Virus record (IMG/VR): IMGVR_UViG_3300010403_000705
Span: 1-64,000 of that record
DNA length: 64,000 nt
Direction: 5' to 3' (one strand)
In this document: piece by piece, positions 15,009 to 61,056 of the stretch
Numbering within the stretch: the first letter of the stretch is position 1
Layout: each line of letters opens with the position of its first letter
The notes under the pieces: model-generated
The model's input: only the letters and a program-made list of their open reading frames with translations
What the model was told of the DNA's origin: nothing
Databases searched by the model: none
Made by a program: the position numbers and the translations under genes

Positions 15009-15365
15009 ATGCGTAAACCCTTAGAAATATTTTTTGATGAGGAAGGTAACCTATTAAATAGAGTTTATAATCCTATTTATCATAATAGTGGCTACCAGTA
15101 TAAAAAAGAAGATAATTCTGTATTTTTTGATAAGTTAGAATATGTTGATTATATGTCTGCTGGTAAAGGCGGAGATTCTAAAATAATATTTAAATCTCTC
15201 AATTCTGGAAGAACATATTATATGTTTATTTCGGATTTTCATGATGTATTGGTCAATAAATTATTTGTTAATAATGTAATAGACAATAGATTCACTTTTT
15301 GTAAGAGGGGATCTTCACAAGGTATTAAAGTAATTAAGGAGAAAAATAATGAAGCAATTAGATGA
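15009..15365 (+). CDS. hypothetical protein
   Basis: 118 aa; FTFCKRG. Confidence 0.65.
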   Translation: MRKPLEIFFDEEGNLLNRVYNPIYHNSGYQYKKEDNSVFFDKLEYVDYMSAGKGGDSKIIFKSLNSGRTYYMFISDFHDVLVNKLFVNNVIDNRFTFCKRGSSQGIKVIKEKNNEAIR

Positions 15366-20181: not shown

Positions 20182-20267
20182 GGGCGTGTGGCGGAATGGC
20201 AGACGCACCGGCTTCAAACTCCGGCACCTAACTAAGTATGTGGGTTCAAATCCCTCCATGCCCACCA
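20182..20267 (+). tRNA. tRNA-Leu(CAA)
   Basis: Acceptor GGGCGTG/CATGCCC, A73+CCA, loop TTCAAAC, long variable arm, TTCAAAT T-loop. Confidence 0.88.
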
Positions 20268-20286
20268 TTTTATTATATTGGGTATT

Positions 20287-20742
20287 ATGAATTTGCAAAA
20301 AAATTTGATTATTAGAGTTAAAAATTTTAATAGCATATGTAATGATGTTATTTTGATGAAGAGTTTAAGAAAATTAACTCTTCATCATTTTTCTGGAATG
20401 AACTATGAATTAAATAATTTTGAAAAACTTGCTAAAATTCGAAATGTAAAAGCACAAGTCTTAATGGCTTATTTAAATGACGAATTAGTCGGTTGGTCTC
20501 TTTTGTCCAAAGAGCCTAGTAATTTTTTATTTGGAAAATCTTTGAAGACTTATGATCCATCCTATGGTATGTTATTTCAAATCTATATTGCGCCACTACA
20601 CCGACGAAAAGGTATTGGATCGGAGTTACTAAAGGTCGCGCGACGTAAAGCTAGTCCATATAGATTATGTTTTTGTCCTTGGAATAACGCAAGTACTAAG
20701 TTTTATAGCAATTTTAATTATCATTGGAATATAAGTTTATGA
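20287..20742 (+). CDS. GNAT-family acetyltransferase
   Basis: IYIAPLHRRKGIGSELL acetyl-CoA motif A; N..S.KFY. Confidence 0.8.
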   Translation: MNLQKNLIIRVKNFNSICNDVILMKSLRKLTLHHFSGMNYELNNFEKLAKIRNVKAQVLMAYLNDELVGWSLLSKEPSNFLFGKSLKTYDPSYGMLFQIYIAPLHRRKGIGSELLKVARRKASPYRLCFCPWNNASTKFYSNFNYHWNISL

Positions 20743-21224
20743 TTAAGTTTTATTCAATACATGGTACATATGCGGGATTTTCTAATTTTTCTCATCACCC
20801 AATAACTTTAAAAAATAAGATTTGGAAAACCTCTGAACATTATTTTCAGGCGCAAAAATTTGCGGGAACTTTTTTAGAGTCAGCTGTAAGAAGATGTAAA
20901 GGAGCTAGTGATGCTGCTCGTATGGGTAGAGATAGAAATAATCCTTTGCGACGTGATTGGGAAAATGTAAAAGATAATGTAATGAGGAAAATAGTATTAG
21001 CTAAATTTTCTCAACATGAAGATTTGAAAAAATTATTGCTTTCTACTGGTAACGAACAATTGGTAGAGCATACAGAAAAAGACAAATATTGGGCAGACGG
21101 AGGAAATGGAAGCGGTAAAAATATGTTAGGAATTATTTTAATGGAAGTAAGAAGAGCCTTAAATTCTCCAGCAGAAATGCAAAAATATATAGATAAATTT
21201 AATCTGGAATCAGAATTATATTAA
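20739..21224 (+). CDS. NADAR (YbiA-like) family protein
   Basis: FSNF, TSEHYFQAQKF, AKFSQH, D.YWADG, GKNMLG.ILMEVR. Confidence 0.93.
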   Translation: MIKFYSIHGTYAGFSNFSHHPITLKNKIWKTSEHYFQAQKFAGTFLESAVRRCKGASDAARMGRDRNNPLRRDWENVKDNVMRKIVLAKFSQHEDLKKLLLSTGNEQLVEHTEKDKYWADGGNGSGKNMLGIILMEVRRALNSPAEMQKYIDKFNLESELY

Positions 21225-21260
21225 TATCTTGATATAAGACTATAAATAATAGTCTTATAT

Positions 21261-21348
21261 ACCAATGTGGCGTAAACGGCTAGCCGCGGCAGTCTTAGAA
21301 GCTGTTGGGAGAAATCCCGTGTAGGTTCGAATCCTATCATTGGTACCA
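21261..21348 (+). tRNA. tRNA-Leu(TAG)
   Basis: Acceptor ACCAATG/CATTGGT, A73+CCA, loop CTTAGAA, GGGA-GAAA-TCCC variable arm. Confidence 0.92.
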
Positions 21349-21355
21349 AAGAATC

Positions 21356-21973
21356 ATGAAAGATTTATTAGAATCATTAATTCAAAAATCTGTTAGAGAT
21401 ATTCAAATTCAAGAAGATAGAAGAATTACTCGATTGCTTAATAAGACAATAGGTAATGTAAAAATGGAAGTAAGTATACATCAATGGTCTTTAGGTTATG
21501 TGCTTATTGGATCTGAACATAATGATTTATTTGCGGTAGAACTAGGTAATGATATTAATGAATGTTATAGAAATTTTTATAATAGATGGTCCAAATTACC
21601 AGGTCCCTATGAAATAGAAGAGCGTAAAAATTTTCAAATAGTTGATAAGGTGATTTCATCCATGGAATCTGGAGTTATGAATGCATCTTTAAAAATAAAT
21701 TATAAAAGTCATCCTTTTAGTACACCTATTAGATATTTGGTCTGGGAAACTTTATTAAACACTGCACCTGGTGAAACTATTTCTTATAAAGAAATTGCTA
21801 ATAAAATTGGAAATCCTAAGGCTGTTCGCGCTATAGGTTCAGCATGTCGAGCCAATCCATTTGCTATTATTATTCCCTGTCATAGAGTAATAAAGAGTGA
21901 TGGAACATCTGGTGAATATCGTTGGGGTATAGATCTTAAAAGAAAATTGTTAGATAAGGAAAAGTCAATCTAA
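21356..21973 (+). CDS. ogt: methylated-DNA-protein-cysteine methyltransferase
   Basis: GETISY..IA...PKAVRAIGSAC..NP..IIPCHRV; start moved out of the tRNA. Confidence 0.9.
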   Translation: MKDLLESLIQKSVRDIQIQEDRRITRLLNKTIGNVKMEVSIHQWSLGYVLIGSEHNDLFAVELGNDINECYRNFYNRWSKLPGPYEIEERKNFQIVDKVISSMESGVMNASLKINYKSHPFSTPIRYLVWETLLNTAPGETISYKEIANKIGNPKAVRAIGSACRANPFAIIIPCHRVIKSDGTSGEYRWGIDLKRKLLDKEKSI

Positions 21974-21976
21974 AAT

Positions 21977-22578
21977 ATGTTAAATAAACAATTAATAGCA
22001 GAAGGCGGTATTGTTGAGTTTGATCCGTCTTTTTTAGTTTTAGATGAAGCAAATGCTCTTCTTTTTTATTTAAAAAATAATGTGAATTGGGAACAAAAAT
22101 ACTACTACAATTATAGAAATAAAAGTAATTATCCGCAACCTAGATTAACTGCTTGGTACGCAGACAGTCCTGATATGCAGTATAGTTATTCTGGTGTTAC
22201 ACAAAAGGTTCAACCATGGGATAATGAATTATTGAATTTAAAAAATAAAATTCAATTAATAACTAAATCGGACTATAATAGCGTCTTGTTAAATTTTTAT
22301 CGCAATGGTAATGATTCGGTAGGTTTACATGCCGATGATGAAAAGGAATTAGGAAATAACGCTAACATTGCATCTGTCTCATTAGGAGCAACACGAAAAT
22401 TTCAGTTAGTTCAGTATAAAGGTAGTTTACCATATGGCAATTACGAATATGTTTGTGTCATGGTTCATTACTAGTGATGAGTGGTACTACACAACATTAT
22501 TGGAAACATTCAGTTCTTAAAGAGCCATCTGTAATAAACGGTAGAATAAACTTAACTTTCAGAAGATTCTTAAAATAA
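21977..22578 (+). pseudogene. AlkB-family (ALKBH2/3-like) dioxygenase with a -1 frameshift near 22450
   Basis: QPRLTAWY, NFYRNGNDSVGLHADDE in the first frame; HGSLLVM..TQHYWKHSV..RINLTFR continues in the -1 frame to TAA 22578. Confidence 0.85.
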
Positions 22579-22637
22579 ATTGTTAGAGGAGAGTCTGGAT
22601 ATAATACTAATAAAAATAAATAATATAATAAAGTTGA

Positions 22638-22721
22638 GCCAACATGGTGGAATGGCATACACACAGGTCTAAGAAGCCTGCACCGTAAGGTTTGAGGGTT
22701 CAAATCCCTCTGTTGGCACCA
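22638..22721 (+). tRNA. tRNA-Leu(AAG)
   Basis: Acceptor GCCAACA/TGTTGGC, A73+CCA, stem CAGGT/GCCTG, loop CTAAGAA. Confidence 0.9.
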
Positions 22722-22771
22722 GAGAGGTATAATGCTAAAATCAATAGAAAAATTTACATAAAATTTGTTAT

Positions 22772-22846
22772 GGTTCCATCGTCTACTGGCTAGGACATTT
22801 GGTTCTCAACCAAAGAAAGACGGATCGTAACCGTCTGGAATCACCA
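22772..22846 (+). tRNA. tRNA-Glu(CTC)
   Basis: Acceptor GGTTCCA/TGGAATC, TTTGG-TTCTCAA-CCAAA, atypical T-loop ATCGTAA, CCA. Confidence 0.85.
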
Positions 22847-23288: not shown

Positions 23289-23370
23289 GCGCCTATAGTC
23301 TAGCGGATAAGGCACTCGACTACGAATCGAGGGATGAAAATCATGGTGGGTTCGACTCCTACTGGGCGTG
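23289..23370 (+). tRNA. tRNA-Arg(ACG) with extended variable arm; no encoded CCA
   Basis: CTCGA-CTACGAA-TCGAG, GTGGG-TTCGACT-CCTAC, extra GAT-GAAA-ATC hairpin. Confidence 0.85.
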
Positions 23371-23423
23371 CTAAAAAAACTTATATGAATTCATATAAGT
23401 TTTTTTTTATTTGGAACAAAATT

Positions 23424-55155: not shown

Positions 55156-55233
55156 GCCGAATTCGTATAGTGGCAATACCCAGCCCTTGTAACGCTGTGA
55201 CGCATTAGGGTTCGATCCCCGCATTCGGCTCCA
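55156..55233 (+). tRNA. tRNA-Thr(TGT), atypical (4-nt insertion in T-stem)
   Basis: GCCGAAT/ATTCGGC, T73+CCA, loop CTTGTAA; T-stem GC-ATTA-GGG/CCCGC. Confidence 0.7.
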
Positions 55234-55238
55234 TACAT

Positions 55239-55312
55239 GCTCTTTTAGTATAGTGGTATTACATCATCTTGGTACGATGATAACTCGGGTTCAATCCCCG
55301 GAAAGAGCTCCA
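55239..55312 (+). tRNA. tRNA-Thr(GGT)
   Basis: GCTCTTT/AAAGAGC, TCATC-TTGGTAC-GATGA, CCA. Confidence 0.9.
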
Positions 55313-55317
55313 CAATT

Positions 55318-55392
55318 GCTGATTTAGTTTAATTATAAAAACATCTCTCTCGTAAAGAGAAAACATCGGGGAAGTACCGATATTCAGCTCCA
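55318..55392 (+). tRNA. tRNA-Thr(CGT), non-canonical D and T loops
   Basis: TCTCT-CTCGTAA-AGAGA; ATCGG-GGAAGTA-CCGAT; D-loop lacks GG; CCA. Confidence 0.75.
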
Positions 55393-55412
55393 ATTATTAA
55401 GGTAAACATATT

Positions 55413-55640
55413 ATGAATAATAAAATTGTGGATGTTTTAAATAAAAGTAAAGTTTTAGCATCAAAATTTGATTTATCCAAAGTTAATCTTCCTGATTTAG
55501 ATAAAGAAGAAATAATTACTTGTCTGAATAGAGTATTAGATCATATGCTTGCTAATTCATCTGTGATAGAAATGGAAGTAACACAAGATATAGAAGACGC
55601 TATACAAACAATAAATGAATTGTATGAAAAATTAAATTAA
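55413..55640 (+). CDS. hypothetical protein
   Basis: 75 aa ORF between the tRNAs and tmRNA. Confidence 0.65.
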   Translation: MNNKIVDVLNKSKVLASKFDLSKVNLPDLDKEEIITCLNRVLDHMLANSSVIEMEVTQDIEDAIQTINELYEKLN

Positions 55641-55644
55641 GTAT

Positions 55645-55997
55645 GGGCTGCTCCCGGTTTCGACGGGGTATCAGAAAGATTAGAATGCAGGTCAAGAATG
55701 ATTGTTTCTTGTAAAAAATCAATCAACGTATAAATGCAAACGATAACGCATTTGTTCCAATGGCACAAGCTGCTTAATTGGATGTCTTGAGATGAGATAG
55801 TTTTGGTAATCAAAAAGGCATTATTTACAAAAGCTAGTTTATATTTTGGTCGCGGAATTATGAATAAAATAAACAGCGAATAGTTCGTGGAACGATATCT
55901 ACAATTGTTGTTGGTTACAATCTTAATCAAACAAACCTGTAACGAGTTTTAATAGTTCATGCCGCGGAAAAGGGTTCGACTCCCTTGCGGTCCACCA
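55645..55997 (+). ncRNA. ssrA: tmRNA, one-piece; tag ANDNAFVPMAQAA at 55736..55777
   Basis: 5' GGGCTGC..GGTTTCGAC; 3' GGGTTCGACTCCC..GCGGTCCACCA with G3.U70; ATAAAT-GCA resume context; tag ends AA-stop. Confidence 0.93.
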
Positions 55998-57997: not shown

Positions 57998-58342
57998 ATG
58001 TCATAGATTAAATATGGTGATAAATTGTATATCGTTACGCGTGCTGATATAATACCTGGATATCAAGCCGTGCAAGGAATTCATGCGGCAATTCAATTTG
58101 CTACCGAATATCCCGAAATTAATAAAGAATGGTTTGAGAAATCTAACTATCTTGGCTTTCTATCAGTGAATAACGAGCTTGAACTTTTCAAATTAATTGA
58201 AAATGCTTCCAAACAGAATATTAAATTCTCCATTTTTAGAGAACCAGATATAAATAATCAAATTACAGCTATTGCTTTAGCTCCAGGTTCTAGTACAAAA
58301 AAACTTTGTAATAAAATTCCTTTAGCTTTAAAATTAGGATAA
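57998..58342 (+). CDS. Pth2-like peptidyl-tRNA hydrolase; in-frame TAG at codon 3
   Basis: AGGAG-N6-ATG TCA TAG ATT AAA TAT GGT GAT AAA TTG TAT; KLYIVTR.D...G..AVQ..HA, FREPD....TAIA. Confidence 0.8.
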
Positions 58343-58344
58343 AT

Positions 58345-58629
58345 ATGAATTTTAGCTCTTCACCATTAAAAATTAGATTAGCAGATTAGCGTGAATGGGA
58401 TATTGCGGCTTATGAGTTGGGCGTATGCTTAGGATTATGGATGGATTTTGGAGCCCCTCACGGAGAAGATCCATGGCATGGTTTAAAGCATATTTTTTGA
58501 ACTGATAATTCAGTAGGCAATTCTCTTCATAATATATTGATCCACTTAGTAGATTGTGGTATTTTACAAGAAAAAGACGATAAGGAATATTTTAGATGGA
58601 ATTCAAATTTTGATCCAGATAAAATATAA
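58345..58629 (+). pseudogene. 94-codon hypothetical gene with internal TAG (58387) and TGA (58498)
   Basis: MNFSSSPLKIRLAD*REWDIAAYELGVCLGLW...KHIF*TDNSVGNSLHNILIHLVDCGIL...FRWN; AGGA SD. Confidence 0.7.
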
Positions 58630-58636
58630 ATCTAAT

Positions 58637-58709
58637 TCTCCTGTAGCTCAGCGGTTAGAGTATCCGTCCCTAAAACGGTAATGCGTGGGTTCGAATCCCT
58701 CCAGGGGAG
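58637..58709 (+). tRNA. tRNA with CTA (amber) anticodon, C33, no encoded CCA; alternatively a drifted Arg(CCT)
   Basis: TCTCCTG/CAGGGGA, G73; TCCGT-CCCTAAA-ACGGT; GTGGG-TTCGAAT-CCCTC. Confidence 0.7.
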
Positions 58710-58743
58710 CTAATTATTTTATATCTAAAATGGGGAATTTAAA

Positions 58744-59709
58744 TTGAAACATTTACACTTATATGATAGAGATTACATAAATTCTTCTTTAGATCTAGAA
58801 GAAGAAATTATTAAATTAAAAAAAGAACGCAATGCTGTTATTTTAGCACATTATTATCAAGATTCTGAAATTCAAGATATTGCAGATTTTATCGGAGACT
58901 CATTACAATTATCACAAGAAGCTGTAAAAACTCAAGCTGATATAATTTGTTTTGCTGGAGTTCATTTTATGGCTGAAACAGCAAAAATTCTCAATTCTAA
59001 CAAAATTGTTGTTCTTCCTGATTTAGAAGCTGGCTGCTCATTAGCTGATGGTTGTCCTGCCGATAAGTTTGCGGCATGGAAAAGTTTATATCCTAATTCA
59101 ATTGTCATTAGCTATATAAATTGTTCTGCAGAAGTAAAATCTTTGTCTGATTACATTTGTACTTCATCAAATGCAGAAAAAATTGTCAGATCAATTCCGG
59201 CGGATAAAACGATTTTATTTGCCCCTGATAAAAATCTTGGTGCATTTATTCAAAAACGGCTGGATAGACCTATGATTTTGTGGCAAGGAAGTTGCATTGT
59301 TCATGAAACTTTTAGTGAAAGAAAATTAATTTCTCTTAAAGAGCGTTACCCTCAGGCATTAATTTTGGCACATCCGGAATGCGAAGAAGCTATTTTAAGA
59401 ATGGCAGATTACGTCGGATCTACTACTGGTATTCTTAATTTTGCCATTAACCATAATAATACAGAATTTATTATTGCAACTGAATCTGGTATTTTGCATC
59501 AAATGCAAAAAGCAGCTCCTCATAAAATATTTATTCCGGCACCACCAGAAACTAACTGTGCGTGTAATGAATGTCCTTTTATGAAGAAAAATACTTTGGA
59601 AAAAGTTTACTTATCATTGAAAAATTTACAACCACAGATACACTTGTCAACTGAATTAATGGATAAAGCTCGAGTTTCAATTAATAGAATGCTAGATTTA
59701 AGTAAGTAA
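58744..59709 (+). CDS. nadA: quinolinate synthase
   Basis: ILAHYYQ, GDSL, GVHFMAET, AGCSLA, YINCSA, C.VH, AHPEC, C..MK. Confidence 0.96.
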   Translation: MKHLHLYDRDYINSSLDLEEEIIKLKKERNAVILAHYYQDSEIQDIADFIGDSLQLSQEAVKTQADIICFAGVHFMAETAKILNSNKIVVLPDLEAGCSLADGCPADKFAAWKSLYPNSIVISYINCSAEVKSLSDYICTSSNAEKIVRSIPADKTILFAPDKNLGAFIQKRLDRPMILWQGSCIVHETFSERKLISLKERYPQALILAHPECEEAILRMADYVGSTTGILNFAINHNNTEFIIATESGILHQMQKAAPHKIFIPAPPETNCACNECPFMKKNTLEKVYLSLKNLQPQIHLSTELMDKARVSINRMLDLSK

Positions 59710-59736: not shown

Positions 59737-59907
59737 ATGACAAGACTAGAAATACAAACCAAAATAAAAATGCTGCGTGAAGAACTAGAATCCAGACACA
59801 GATATGGATCAATAAAAATTGCTAATGAGGATGGCACACCAGTTTCTGTGGAAAAAATTCAAAATGAATTATATCGACTTATTTATAAATTGAGTAAATT
59901 TGAATAA
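59737..59907 (+). CDS. small hypothetical protein (56 aa, not in ORF track)
   Basis: MTRLEIQTKI...LYRLIYKLSKFE. Confidence 0.6.
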   Translation: MTRLEIQTKIKMLREELESRHRYGSIKIANEDGTPVSVEKIQNELYRLIYKLSKFE

Positions 59908-60355
59908 AATAATTTTATCGATAGAATTAGTACCCTCTAGTTCATGGCTTAATAATGTAAGAAATATTTTATCCCAAACACAATGGGATATTATAAAAAA
60001 TATTGTTTACTCAAAAGCCTATTACATTTGTGAAATTTGTGGAGGAGTGGGTCCCAAGCATCCAGTTGAGTGTCATGAAATATGGAAATATAATGATAAG
60101 AAATTAACTCAACACCTTGAAGGAATGGTTGCTTTATGTCCCAATTGTCATATGGTAAAACATATAGGTTTGGCTCGCATTCGAGGCGATGAGGATAAGG
60201 CGATAGCTCATTTAATGAAAGTGAATAATTGGACGTATAAAAAAAGTATTAAATATATTCAAAAATGTTTTGATATTTGGCGCAAACGCTCTAGTAAAAA
60301 GTGGAAGTTAAGTATTTCTCATTTAAAAGAATACGGAATAGACATAGAAAAATAA
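59900..60355 (+). CDS. HNH-family nuclease-like protein
   Basis: ELVP, CEICGG, CHEIW, LCPNCH.VKH.G. Confidence 0.8.
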   Translation: MNKIILSIELVPSSSWLNNVRNILSQTQWDIIKNIVYSKAYYICEICGGVGPKHPVECHEIWKYNDKKLTQHLEGMVALCPNCHMVKHIGLARIRGDEDKAIAHLMKVNNWTYKKSIKYIQKCFDIWRKRSSKKWKLSISHLKEYGIDIEK

Positions 60356-60984: not shown

Positions 60985-61056
60985 CTCCTTGTAGTTCAGA
61001 GGAAGAACGCAAAACTCCTAAGTTTGATGTCGTAGGTTCGATTCCTACCAAGGAGG
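60985..61056 (+). tRNA. tRNA-Arg(CCT); no encoded CCA
   Basis: CTCCTTG/CAAGGAG, G73, loop CTCCTAA, GTAGG-TTCGATT-CCTAC. Confidence 0.88.

What the first reader, a model, noticed from the sequence alone, without database searches (positions are those of the whole stretch)
58637..58712. Putative amber suppressor tRNA with non-canonical C33
The cloverleaf is otherwise canonical, but the loop is C32-C33-C34-T35-A36-A37-A38 instead of having the near-universal U33. It could be a true CUA suppressor (U1-A72 and G73 are compatible with Gln/Trp/Lys-type charging). It could also be an Arg(CCT) gene whose loop slipped by one base (CTCCTAA to CCCTAAA); an intact Arg(CCT) lies at 60985. A slipped loop would be a simple route to a new suppressor.
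Basis: partly seen in the sequence, partly recalled or inferred. Interest (0 to 1): 0.6.

Follow-up and report, generated by a model that had tools for sequence, protein, structure and literature searches.

The report
Phage amber-suppressor tRNA with C33
This is a real stop-codon-reading (amber suppressor) tRNA gene of a 433-kb soil megaphage whose relatives all keep the usual U at loop position 33, and the odd C coincides with a genome that again tolerates TAG stop codons.

Summary
Window 58637-58709 (+) is a 73-nt tRNA (ARAGORN anticodon CUA; Rfam tRNA 54.9 bits) with loop C32-C33-C34-U35-A36-A37-A38, U1-A72 and G73. The window opens a 432,844-bp soil megaphage record with about 40 tRNAs, a tmRNA, RF2, LysRS and GluRS.

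Eight related loci carry one or two CUA tRNAs in the same block (PTH2, tRNA, nadA, tRNA, HNH, tRNA-Arg CCT). All of those CUA tRNAs have U33; only this one has C33. tRNA-Arg(CCT) is conserved separately about 2.3 kb downstream, so the slipped-Arg idea fails. No PylS gene is present.

The phage uses the standard code. I found no in-frame TAG in genes shared with its closest relative (446.5 kb).

TAG is a rare stop in the five relatives (1.8-5.5% of long ORFs; TAG/TGA 0.06-0.14). It is 8.9% here (TAG/TGA 0.34; p = 3.5e-4).

My reading: this is a clade-conserved suppressor belonging to an RF2-containing "TAG-reading kit". A U33-to-C change probably weakened it without killing it, and selection against TAG stops has relaxed. 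The inserted amino acid (Gln or Lys), expression and suppression efficiency are untested. C33 also occurs in conserved tRNA-Pro genes of this clade.

The parts
58637..58709 (+). tRNA gene, anticodon CUA (amber suppressor type). 73 nt, no encoded CCA, U1-A72, G73.
   Evidence: ARAGORN; Rfam RF00005 at 54.9 bits; sequence; 89% identical to the ortholog in G001.
58668..58674 (+). Anticodon loop C32 C33 C34 U35 A36 A37 A38. C33 = 58669; anticodon = 58670-58672.
   Evidence: In alignment A1, position 33 is T in the other 10 rows.
58345..58629 (+). 94-codon ORF ending 7 nt before the tRNA. It carries an in-frame TAG (58387-58389) and an in-frame TGA (58498-58500). Probably a young pseudogene.
   Evidence: Intact homologs lie in L007 5233-5508 and L008 4586-4831. 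The TAG aligns with Trp in both; the TGA aligns with Trp in L008. No Pfam or PHROG match.
58025..58342 (+). PTH2-like peptidyl-tRNA hydrolase gene, upstream neighbour conserved in all eight related loci.
   Evidence: Pfam PF01981, E = 5.8e-8; synteny.
58744..59709 (+). nadA (quinolinate synthase), the downstream neighbour. It is the anchor gene that flanks the CUA tRNAs in all related loci.
   Evidence: Pfam PF02445, E = 5.5e-121.
55645..55997 (+). Phage tmRNA (tag ANDNAFVPMAQAA) in the same conserved block of translation-related genes.
   Evidence: ARAGORN; Rfam RF00023 at 110 bits; tmRNA present in the related loci.
60985..61056 (+). tRNA-Arg(CCT), a separate, independently conserved gene and not the parent of the CUA tRNA.

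Best explanation
The feature is a genuine phage-encoded amber-suppressor tRNA (anticodon CUA). It belongs to a lineage kept next to nadA throughout a clade of soil megaphages.

Shown:
- The gene, its cloverleaf and its CUA anticodon.
- Orthology to suppressors with U33.
- A single U33-to-C change in this phage.
- Standard-code usage by the genome.
- A phage RF2 gene. RF2 ends translation at UAA and UGA but not at UAG.
- Strong avoidance of TAG stops in the relatives and much weaker avoidance here.

Inferred:
- The tRNA is transcribed with its + strand neighbours and processed.
- It receives CCA from the host enzyme or from the phage's CCA-adding-like enzyme.
- It is charged through its U35-centred identity by GlnRS (U1-A72 and G73 favour this) or by LysRS (the body resembles tRNA-Lys, and the phage encodes a LysRS).
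- It then competes with host RF1 at UAG.
- In the relatives this read-through is strong enough to purge TAG stops.
- In this phage, C33 and the absence of a second suppressor have lowered read-through, so TAG stops have come back.

The tRNA is most likely still active, only weaker.
For: The gene is real:
- ARAGORN and Rfam both call it.
- The cloverleaf is supported by covariation across 11 tRNAs: 93.9% of cells paired, and 18 of 21 pairs show changes on both sides.

Orthology:
- Eight related loci have CUA tRNAs in the same gene order.
- One further CUA tRNA, missed by ARAGORN, lies at L003 5545-5617.
- All have U33.

Constraint:
- The tRNA is 89% identical to the G001 ortholog. The nadA protein is 81% identical, and most same-anticodon tRNA pairs are 56-96% identical.
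- G002's ortholog keeps the acceptor helix through three compensatory pair changes.

The kit:
- RF2 scores 410 bits on TIGR00020 with SPF and GGQ motifs intact, and is also present in G001.
- LysRS, GluRS and a CCA-adding-like enzyme are encoded.
- A tmRNA and a PTH2-like gene lie beside the tRNA.
- The pairing of RF2 with tRNA(CUA) is what TAG-recoded Lak and Agate phages carry and what recoded jumbo phages carry.

Standard code:
- No in-frame TAG was found in genes shared by G000 and G001.

Relaxed avoidance of TAG stops:
- TAG is 8.9% of stops here against 1.8-5.5% in five relatives.
- In orthologous gene pairs, 28 G000 genes end in TAG against 6 in G001, and only one pair shares it.
- Fisher p = 3.5e-4 for TAG share against pooled relatives, and p = 2e-5 for TAG versus TGA.
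- Background TAG/TGA trinucleotide ratios are alike in all six genomes.

C33 is compatible with function:
- Yeast tRNA-Leu(GAG) naturally has C33 and is barely impaired (bioRxiv 10.64898/2026.02.20.707122).
- C33 is kept in tRNA-Pro genes of three genomes of this clade.
Against: - There are no expression, charging or suppression data. No RNA run holds the locus.
- C33 was not verified from reads.
- Besides C33, the tRNA has two mismatches (U27.U43, U50.U64) and two G.U pairs. It scores 7 bits below the G001 ortholog (54.9 against 61.9). That could equally be early decay.
- The link between C33 and TAG-stop frequency rests on one genome, so it is a single evolutionary event. The direction of cause is unknown.
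- Four of the five relatives are partial records, 32-62% complete.
- My gene sets come from ORF length and pairwise homology, not from a gene caller.
- The purpose of amber suppression in a phage with no in-frame TAG is not explained by anything measured here.
Confidence: 0.55

Rival explanations
1. Decaying relic: the suppressor is no longer used in this phage. On this view U33C is one of several degenerative changes in a gene on its way to loss.
For: - U33 is in all related CUA tRNAs but not here.
- Relative to G001 there are three weakened pairs: C3-G70 to U.G, G10-C25 to G.U, and G27.U43 to U.U.
- This genome has only one CUA tRNA, against two in G001, G002, G003 and G005.
- TAG stops are back at an ordinary level.
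- The neighbouring small ORF is broken by TAG and TGA.
Against: - The tRNA is 89% identical to the G001 ortholog, better than most tRNA pairs and better than the flanking nadA.
- The Rfam score is well inside the range of the other tRNAs.
- T31-A39 is a better pair than G001's C31.A39.
- RF2 is intact.
- C33 is tolerated in other conserved tRNAs of the clade and in yeast.
Confidence: 0.25
2. Adaptive C33: the change was selected. It would either tune suppression down to a level compatible with TAG-ending genes, or make the anticodon loop a poorer substrate for a host nuclease that cuts at or next to U33.
For: - C33 recurs in this clade: 8 of 176 tRNAs.
- These include a tRNA-Pro series kept in G000, G001 and G003.
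- T-to-C runs against the AT drift of a 33% GC genome.
- G33 in the Candida tRNA-Ser(CAG) is a cited precedent for a position-33 change that lowers decoding during a code change.
Against: - The CUA tRNA with C33 is a single occurrence, with no polymorphism or parallel change in another suppressor.
- No nuclease or defence system has been tied to it.
- No functional data exist.
Confidence: 0.12
3. Arg(CCT) gene whose anticodon loop slipped by one base.
For: Only the formal resemblance of CTCCTAA to CCCTAAA, and an Arg(CCT) gene 2.3 kb away.
Against: - All orthologs are CUA tRNAs with loop CTCTAAA.
- Arg(CCT) is conserved as its own gene in the related loci.
- The two window tRNAs are 50/74 identical.
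- A slip needs a deletion plus an insertion, whereas one T-to-C substitution explains the loop.
Confidence: 0.01
4. Assembly or sequencing error: the true base at 58669 is T, and the tRNA is an ordinary U33 suppressor.
For: The base was not confirmed by reads, because nothing laid over the tRNA. It lies in a run of three C.
Against: - The metagenome contig and the IMG/VR record agree.
- A second, independent assembly of the run held every sampled 31-mer of the 3.1-kb stretch.
- The higher TAG-stop share is a genome-wide signal that does not depend on this one base.
Confidence: 0.05
5. Pyrrolysine tRNA, as ARAGORN's label suggests.
For: The CUA anticodon only.
Against: - The tRNA has a canonical D loop with GG, a TTCGAAT T loop and a 5-nt variable loop.
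- No PylS is present. The only weak match to the PylS model is the LysRS, at 18 bits against a cut-off of 178.
Confidence: 0.01

Closest known systems
Suppressor tRNA(CUA) plus RF2 'code-change' sets of TAG-recoded phages (Lak, Agate, crAss-like and recoded jumbo phages; Borges et al. preprint 10.1101/2021.08.26.457843, PMC13037316)
   Same: A phage-encoded CUA tRNA together with a phage RF2. The genome is low in GC and TAG is its rarest stop. Other translation genes are also encoded.
   Different: This phage and its closest relative read their shared genes by the standard code, with no in-frame TAG. The clade comes from soil metagenomes rather than gut. The relatives carry several suppressors with different acceptor stems. 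This member has C33.
Standard-code relatives of recoded phages that have acquired a suppressor tRNA (the intermediate state proposed by Borges et al.)
   Same: A suppressor present without recoding, and a rare target stop codon.
   Different: The published example quoted is a TGA suppressor in one Agate phage. Here an amber suppressor set is conserved across a whole clade, and one member seems to be moving back towards ordinary TAG use.
Classical bacterial amber suppressors (E. coli supE tRNA-Gln CUA, supF tRNA-Tyr CUA; from my own knowledge)
   Same: The relatives' loop C-U-C-U-A-A-A is the classical efficient amber-suppressor loop. U35 makes Gln or Lys charging likely.
   Different: These are standing, conserved phage genes rather than laboratory mutants of a host tRNA. 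This one has C33.
Natural tRNAs without U33: yeast tRNA-Leu(GAG) with C33 and Candida tRNA-Ser(CAG) with G33 (10.64898/2026.02.20.707122); eukaryotic initiator tRNAs with C33 (from my own knowledge)
   Same: A working or probably working elongator tRNA that lacks the near-universal U33. A position-33 change is linked to altered decoding strength.
   Different: None of those is a stop-codon suppressor or phage-encoded.

Membership tests
tRNA (Rfam RF00005) | Score above the family's gathering threshold, and a cloverleaf with four helices | tested here: met
   54.9 bits against a threshold of 29; ARAGORN cloverleaf; covariation in 18 of 21 pairs across A1.
tRNA (Rfam RF00005) | Seven-nucleotide anticodon loop with U33 and a purine at position 37 | tested here: not met
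   The loop has 7 nt and A37, but position 33 is C. U33 is a near-universal trait, not an absolute requirement.
Phage amber-suppressor tRNA (Sup-CUA) | Anticodon CUA, kept in orthologs | tested here: met
   CUA in the window and in the CUA tRNAs of eight related loci.
Phage amber-suppressor tRNA (Sup-CUA) | Reads UAG as an amino acid in vivo | not testable with these tools
   Needs a reporter assay or proteomics. There is only indirect support, from the avoidance of TAG stops in relatives.
TAG-recoded phage (genetic code 15) | In-frame TAG codons inside conserved genes; coding density restored when TAG is read as sense | tested here: not met
   No in-frame TAG in genes shared by G000 and G001. 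ORF coverage rises no more for TAG than for TGA. TAG ends 33 of 378 confident genes.
TAG-recoded phage (genetic code 15) | Phage-encoded RF2 accompanying the suppressor | tested here: met
   TIGR00020 at 410 bits against a cut-off of 370; SPF and GGQ present; also present in G001.
tRNA-Pyl | Atypical tRNA-Pyl body together with a PylS synthetase gene | tested here: not met
   Canonical D and T loops. No PylS above cut-off.
tRNA-Arg(CCT) derivative | Orthologs or a close paralog with anticodon CCT | tested here: not met
   Orthologs are all CUA. Identity to the window's Arg(CCT) is 50/74.
tRNA-Gln or tRNA-Lys identity (which amino acid is inserted) | Identity set of GlnRS (U1-A72, G73, G2-C71, G3-C70, U35) or of LysRS (U35, A73); both sets are from my own knowledge | tested here: inconclusive
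   U1-A72, G73 and U35 fit GlnRS, but pairs 2-71 and 3-70 are C-G and U.G. The body is 81.5% identical over 63 nt to an annotated phage tRNA-Lys(CTT), but the discriminator base is G rather than A. Isotype models could not be run.

The most novel reading that the evidence does not exclude
This soil megaphage clade may be a living intermediate in stop-codon reassignment. Its members keep one or two amber suppressors of different isoacceptor origin plus RF2, and they have purged TAG stops, but they have not yet placed TAG inside genes. The window's phage would then be a natural reversal or tuning step. In it, a U33-to-C change damps the last suppressor and TAG stops return. C33 may also be a selected, recurrent trait of tRNAs in this clade, since it is kept in tRNA-Pro genes of three genomes. 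One possible reason is escape from a host nuclease that cuts the anticodon loop at U33.
Probability: 0.2. Interest if true: 0.75.

Novelty: new variant of a known kind. Interest (0 to 1): 0.5.

Why it matters
Phage suppressor tRNAs are known mainly from phages that have already recoded TAG or TGA. How a lineage gets there, and whether it can go back, is argued mostly from models.

This clade gives a concrete case to study:
- It uses the standard code but carries suppressors and RF2.
- Its TAG stops are depleted three- to five-fold against background.
- One member has a single-base change at the most conserved loop position, together with an ordinary TAG-stop share.

That pairing makes a direct experiment possible: compare the C33 and U33 forms of one natural tRNA in an amber reporter. 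The result would say whether position 33 can act as a natural dial for read-through strength.

The case also warns annotators of two things. A CUA tRNA in a phage does not by itself mean code 15. And ARAGORN's 'Pyl' label is only a name for the anticodon.

Tried and rejected
- Near-identical copies of the tRNA. An exact-pattern scan of viral contigs with the anticodon loop left open found nothing. The 3' half is found only in G001. The metagenome scan returned only the source contig. No bacterial genome holds the T arm plus acceptor 3' strand. No donor host tRNA was therefore identified.
- BLAST searches. A megablast of 5 kb around the tRNA against GenBank phages found no match. A blastn of the tRNA against E. 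coli genomes found no match.
- Reads. The single holder is the probable source sample and is kept as contigs. Nothing laid over the tRNA, so C33 stays unverified by reads. This is not evidence against it.
- Genome-wide recoding. ORF coverage by 10-kb bins under four codes shows no region rescued specifically by reading TAG as sense.
- Same-frame ORF pairs split by TAG. These are adjacent genes with their own start codons, or non-coding frames.
- Tandem-stop test. The distance from a TAG stop to the next in-frame stop does not differ from that after TAA or TGA (median 7 codons against 7 and 8). In so AT-rich a genome the test has no power.
- All-against-all search for in-frame TAG in the five relatives. 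The result was swamped by alignments of non-coding frames. I could not filter it without a gene caller and draw no conclusion from it.
- Small ORF 58345-58629 as a natural target of the suppressor. I considered this and think it unlikely, because the ORF also carries an in-frame TGA that a CUA tRNA cannot read. Both stops are one G-to-A step from Trp codons.
- Promoter and terminator scan. Promoter-like hits are at chance level. The single + strand 'terminator' hit is the tRNA's own acceptor/T region.

Full report
**What is there**

Window 58637-58709 on the + strand is a 73-nt tRNA gene. ARAGORN gives anticodon CUA and a normal cloverleaf. The Rfam tRNA model scores it 54.9 bits against a threshold of 29, within the 36-73 bit spread of the genome's other tRNAs.

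Read by hand, the anticodon stem is 58663-58667 / 58675-58679 and the loop is 58668-58674, C-C-C-T-A-A-A. Position 33 (58669) is therefore C and the anticodon is 58670-58672. There are two mismatches (U27.U43, U50.U64), two G.U pairs and no encoded CCA.

**Where it sits**

The window is the first 64 kb of a 432,844-bp IMG/VR virus record, estimated 97% complete and about 33% GC. The record has 39 ARAGORN tRNAs plus a tmRNA. It derives from a 447,633-bp soil metagenome contig whose sequence over the tRNA is identical.

The gene's neighbours on the + strand are:
- a tmRNA (55645-55997)
- a PTH2-like peptidyl-tRNA hydrolase (58025-58342)
- a 94-codon ORF (58345-58629)
- the tRNA itself
- nadA (58744-59709)
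- an HNH endonuclease
- tRNA-Arg(CCT) at 60985

Elsewhere the phage encodes several translation proteins:
- an intact RF2 (TIGR00020 at 410 bits, SPF and GGQ motifs, one ORF without a frameshift)
- a LysRS
- a GluRS
- a CCA-adding-like enzyme

**Relatives**

A search with NadA found ten viral loci. Eight of them (L001-L008) share the order PTH2, tRNA(CUA), nadA, tRNA(CUA), orf58, HNH, tRNA-Arg(CCT). They come from genomes or fragments of up to 446.5 kb.

Each of the eight has one or two CUA tRNAs next to nadA. One more, missed by ARAGORN, lies at L003 5545-5617. G001 has a second, Glu-like CUA tRNA elsewhere.

Every one of these has U33, with loop C-U-C-U-A-A-A or U-U-C-U-A-A-A (or U-U-C-U-A-A-C in the Glu-like one). 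In alignment A1, position 33 is T in ten rows and C only in the window.

The closest orthologs share U1-A72, C2-G71, C4-G69 and G73:
- G001's ortholog is 89% identical.
- G002's ortholog has the same anticodon stem but differs in three acceptor pairs, each changed on both sides.

With G002 as outgroup, the window differs in the loop by one T-to-C change at position 33, and G001 differs by one T-to-C change at position 31.

The cloverleaf fits the eleven aligned tRNAs. 93.9% of cells are paired and 18 of 21 pairs change on both sides; no shuffle or slid control comes close.

The slipped Arg(CCT) idea is refuted. Orthologs are all CUA, Arg(CCT) is conserved as its own gene downstream, and the two window tRNAs are only 50/74 identical.

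tRNA-Pyl is excluded by the canonical body and the lack of a PylS gene.

The amino acid stays open:
- U1-A72, G73 and U35 favour GlnRS, from my own knowledge of E. coli identity rules. Borges et al. also note that amber suppressors tend to be glutaminylated.
- The only annotated phage tRNA that resembles the body is a tRNA-Lys(CTT), 81.5% identical over 63 nt with the same unusual T stem. The phage also carries a LysRS.
- In the clade, the CUA tRNAs upstream of nadA have G73, and three of the four downstream (L002, L007b, L008b) have A73. This suggests two series with different charging.

**Does the phage need it to read its own genes?**

I fetched the closest relative whole (G001, 446.5 kb) and compared all ORFs both ways by tblastn. 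After keeping only the best-scoring frame at each place, no shared gene has an in-frame TAG. The stops found inside alignments lie upstream of start codons or between adjacent genes.

ORF coverage does not rise specifically when TAG is read as sense. TAG ends 33 of 378 confident genes. The phage uses the standard code.

**The small ORF just upstream**

The ORF at 58345-58629 has an in-frame TAG and an in-frame TGA. Intact homologs in G002 and G003 have Trp at the TAG position, and G003 has Trp at the TGA position. Both stops are therefore one G-to-A step from TGG.

Because a CUA tRNA cannot read TGA, I take this ORF for a young pseudogene, not a client of the suppressor.

**A genome-wide signal that bears on C33**

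| Genome | TAG share of stops (ORFs of 150 aa or more) | TAG/TGA among stops |
|---|---|---|
| G000 (this phage) | 8.9% (27/304) | 0.34 |
| G001 | 5.5% | 0.14 |
| G002 | 1.9% | 0.06 |
| G003 | 2.6% | 0.06 |
| G004 | 3.3% | 0.09 |
| G005 | 1.8% | 0.08 |

The TAG/TGA ratio of trinucleotides at all positions is 0.62-0.88 in all six genomes, so the depletion is specific to stops.

In 338 orthologous G000/G001 pairs with aligned C-termini, 28 G000 genes end in TAG against 6 in G001, and only one pair shares it.

Fisher tests:
- p = 3.5e-4 for G000 against the pooled relatives
- p = 2.6e-4 for the shared genes of G000 against G001
- p = 2e-5 for TAG against TGA

The relatives, which have U33 suppressors and usually two of them, avoid TAG stops three to five times more strongly than this phage. 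This phage has one suppressor, and it carries C33. That pattern is expected if suppression is real in the clade and weaker here. It is one lineage, so one event, and the direction of cause is open.

**Is C33 compatible with function?**

A 2026 preprint shows that yeast tRNA-Leu(GAG), which naturally has C33, works almost as well as a U33 version. It also recalls that G33 lowers decoding by the Candida tRNA-Ser(CAG). From memory only, older work on yeast and E. coli amber suppressors found U33 replaceable at some cost; I could not retrieve those papers here.

Within this clade, C33 occurs in 8 of 176 tRNAs. These include a tRNA-Pro series with loop U-C-N-G-G-A-A, kept in G000 and G001, with a close C-C-U-G-G-A-A variant in G003. 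The G000 and G001 Pro(AGG) genes are 91% identical. C33 tRNAs can therefore persist in these phages.

**Comparison with what is known**

Huge phages are known to carry tRNAs, tmRNA, aaRS and release factors (PMC7162821). TAG-recoded Lak, Agate and jumbo phages pair tRNA(CUA) with RF2. Borges et al. propose a path of low GC, then a rare stop codon, then gain of a suppressor, then recoding. They cite one standard-code Agate phage with a TGA suppressor.

The present clade fits the middle of that path for TAG and comes from soil metagenomes. It shows several suppressors of different origin. This member has a position-33 variant and a rebound of TAG stops.

I file it as a new variant of a known kind. 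It is a member of the tRNA family and of the phage amber-suppressor kind by anticodon and orthology. It is not a member of the code-15 phages, because the test for in-frame TAG was not met.

**Limits**

- No reads, RNA or functional data were available.
- Gene sets come from ORF length and homology, not from a gene caller.
- Four of the five relatives are fragments.
- Isotype models could not be run.
- The pieces of related phage records were joined only inside scripts, for comparison.

Noticed in passing
window 58345-58629 (+): A 94-codon ORF that ends 7 nt before the suppressor tRNA. It has an in-frame TAG (58387) and an in-frame TGA (58498). Both sit where intact homologs in two related phages have Trp. 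It has no Pfam or PHROG match and is absent from the closest relative.
   Followed up: partly
G000 405151-405226 (outside the window); G001 423698, 423852, 424008; G003 32994, 34421, 38639: C33 recurs in this clade: 8 of 176 tRNAs. It is mainly in a tRNA-Pro series with loop U-C-N-G-G-A-A and A37, conserved between genomes. One member has the unusual anticodon AGG.
   Followed up: partly
G000 243715-244800, 373819-375378, 378181-379521, 114158-114550 (outside the window): The phage encodes an intact RF2 in one ORF without the usual frameshift, a LysRS, a GluRS and a CCA-adding-like enzyme. The complete relative G001 also has RF2.
   Followed up: partly
window 55156-55997: Three tRNA-Thr genes lie just before a one-piece tmRNA (tag ANDNAFVPMAQAA). 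The third, Thr(CGT) at 55318-55389, is seen only by Rfam and has an odd T loop. The same block occurs in the relatives, with differing tags.
   Followed up: no
alignment A1, columns 32 and 40; L001 5902-5975, L007 7095-7169, L008 7181-7254, L003 6937-7013: Pair 31-39 is unpaired in five of the eleven rows of A1; four of those five are related CUA tRNAs (C.A, A.A or A.C). This leaves a three- or four-pair stem and an effectively nine-base loop. The window's tRNA has a proper U31-A39 pair.
   Followed up: no
L002 7136-7210, L003 6937-7013 and 5545-5617, L007 7095-7169, L008 7181-7254, G001 15230-15303: The clade holds at least five kinds of CUA tRNA with different acceptor stems. These include Lys-like ones with A73 downstream of nadA, and a Glu-like one in G001 that looks like a one-base derivative of tRNA-Glu(CUC).
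   Followed up: partly
window 23289-23371: tRNA-Arg(ACG) is 83 nt long with a long variable region, which is unusual for an Arg tRNA. It follows a cluster of three tRNA-Leu genes and a tRNA-Glu(CUC) at 20182-22846.
   Followed up: no
G004 about 109498 (+): An in-frame TAG aligns with Trp of G001 inside what looks like a homing-endonuclease-type ORF. It is either a possible real read-through site or another broken gene.
   Followed up: no
window 59900-60355: An HNH homing-endonuclease gene (PHROG 5200) sits between nadA and tRNA-Arg(CCT). It is conserved at that place in most relatives.
   Followed up: no
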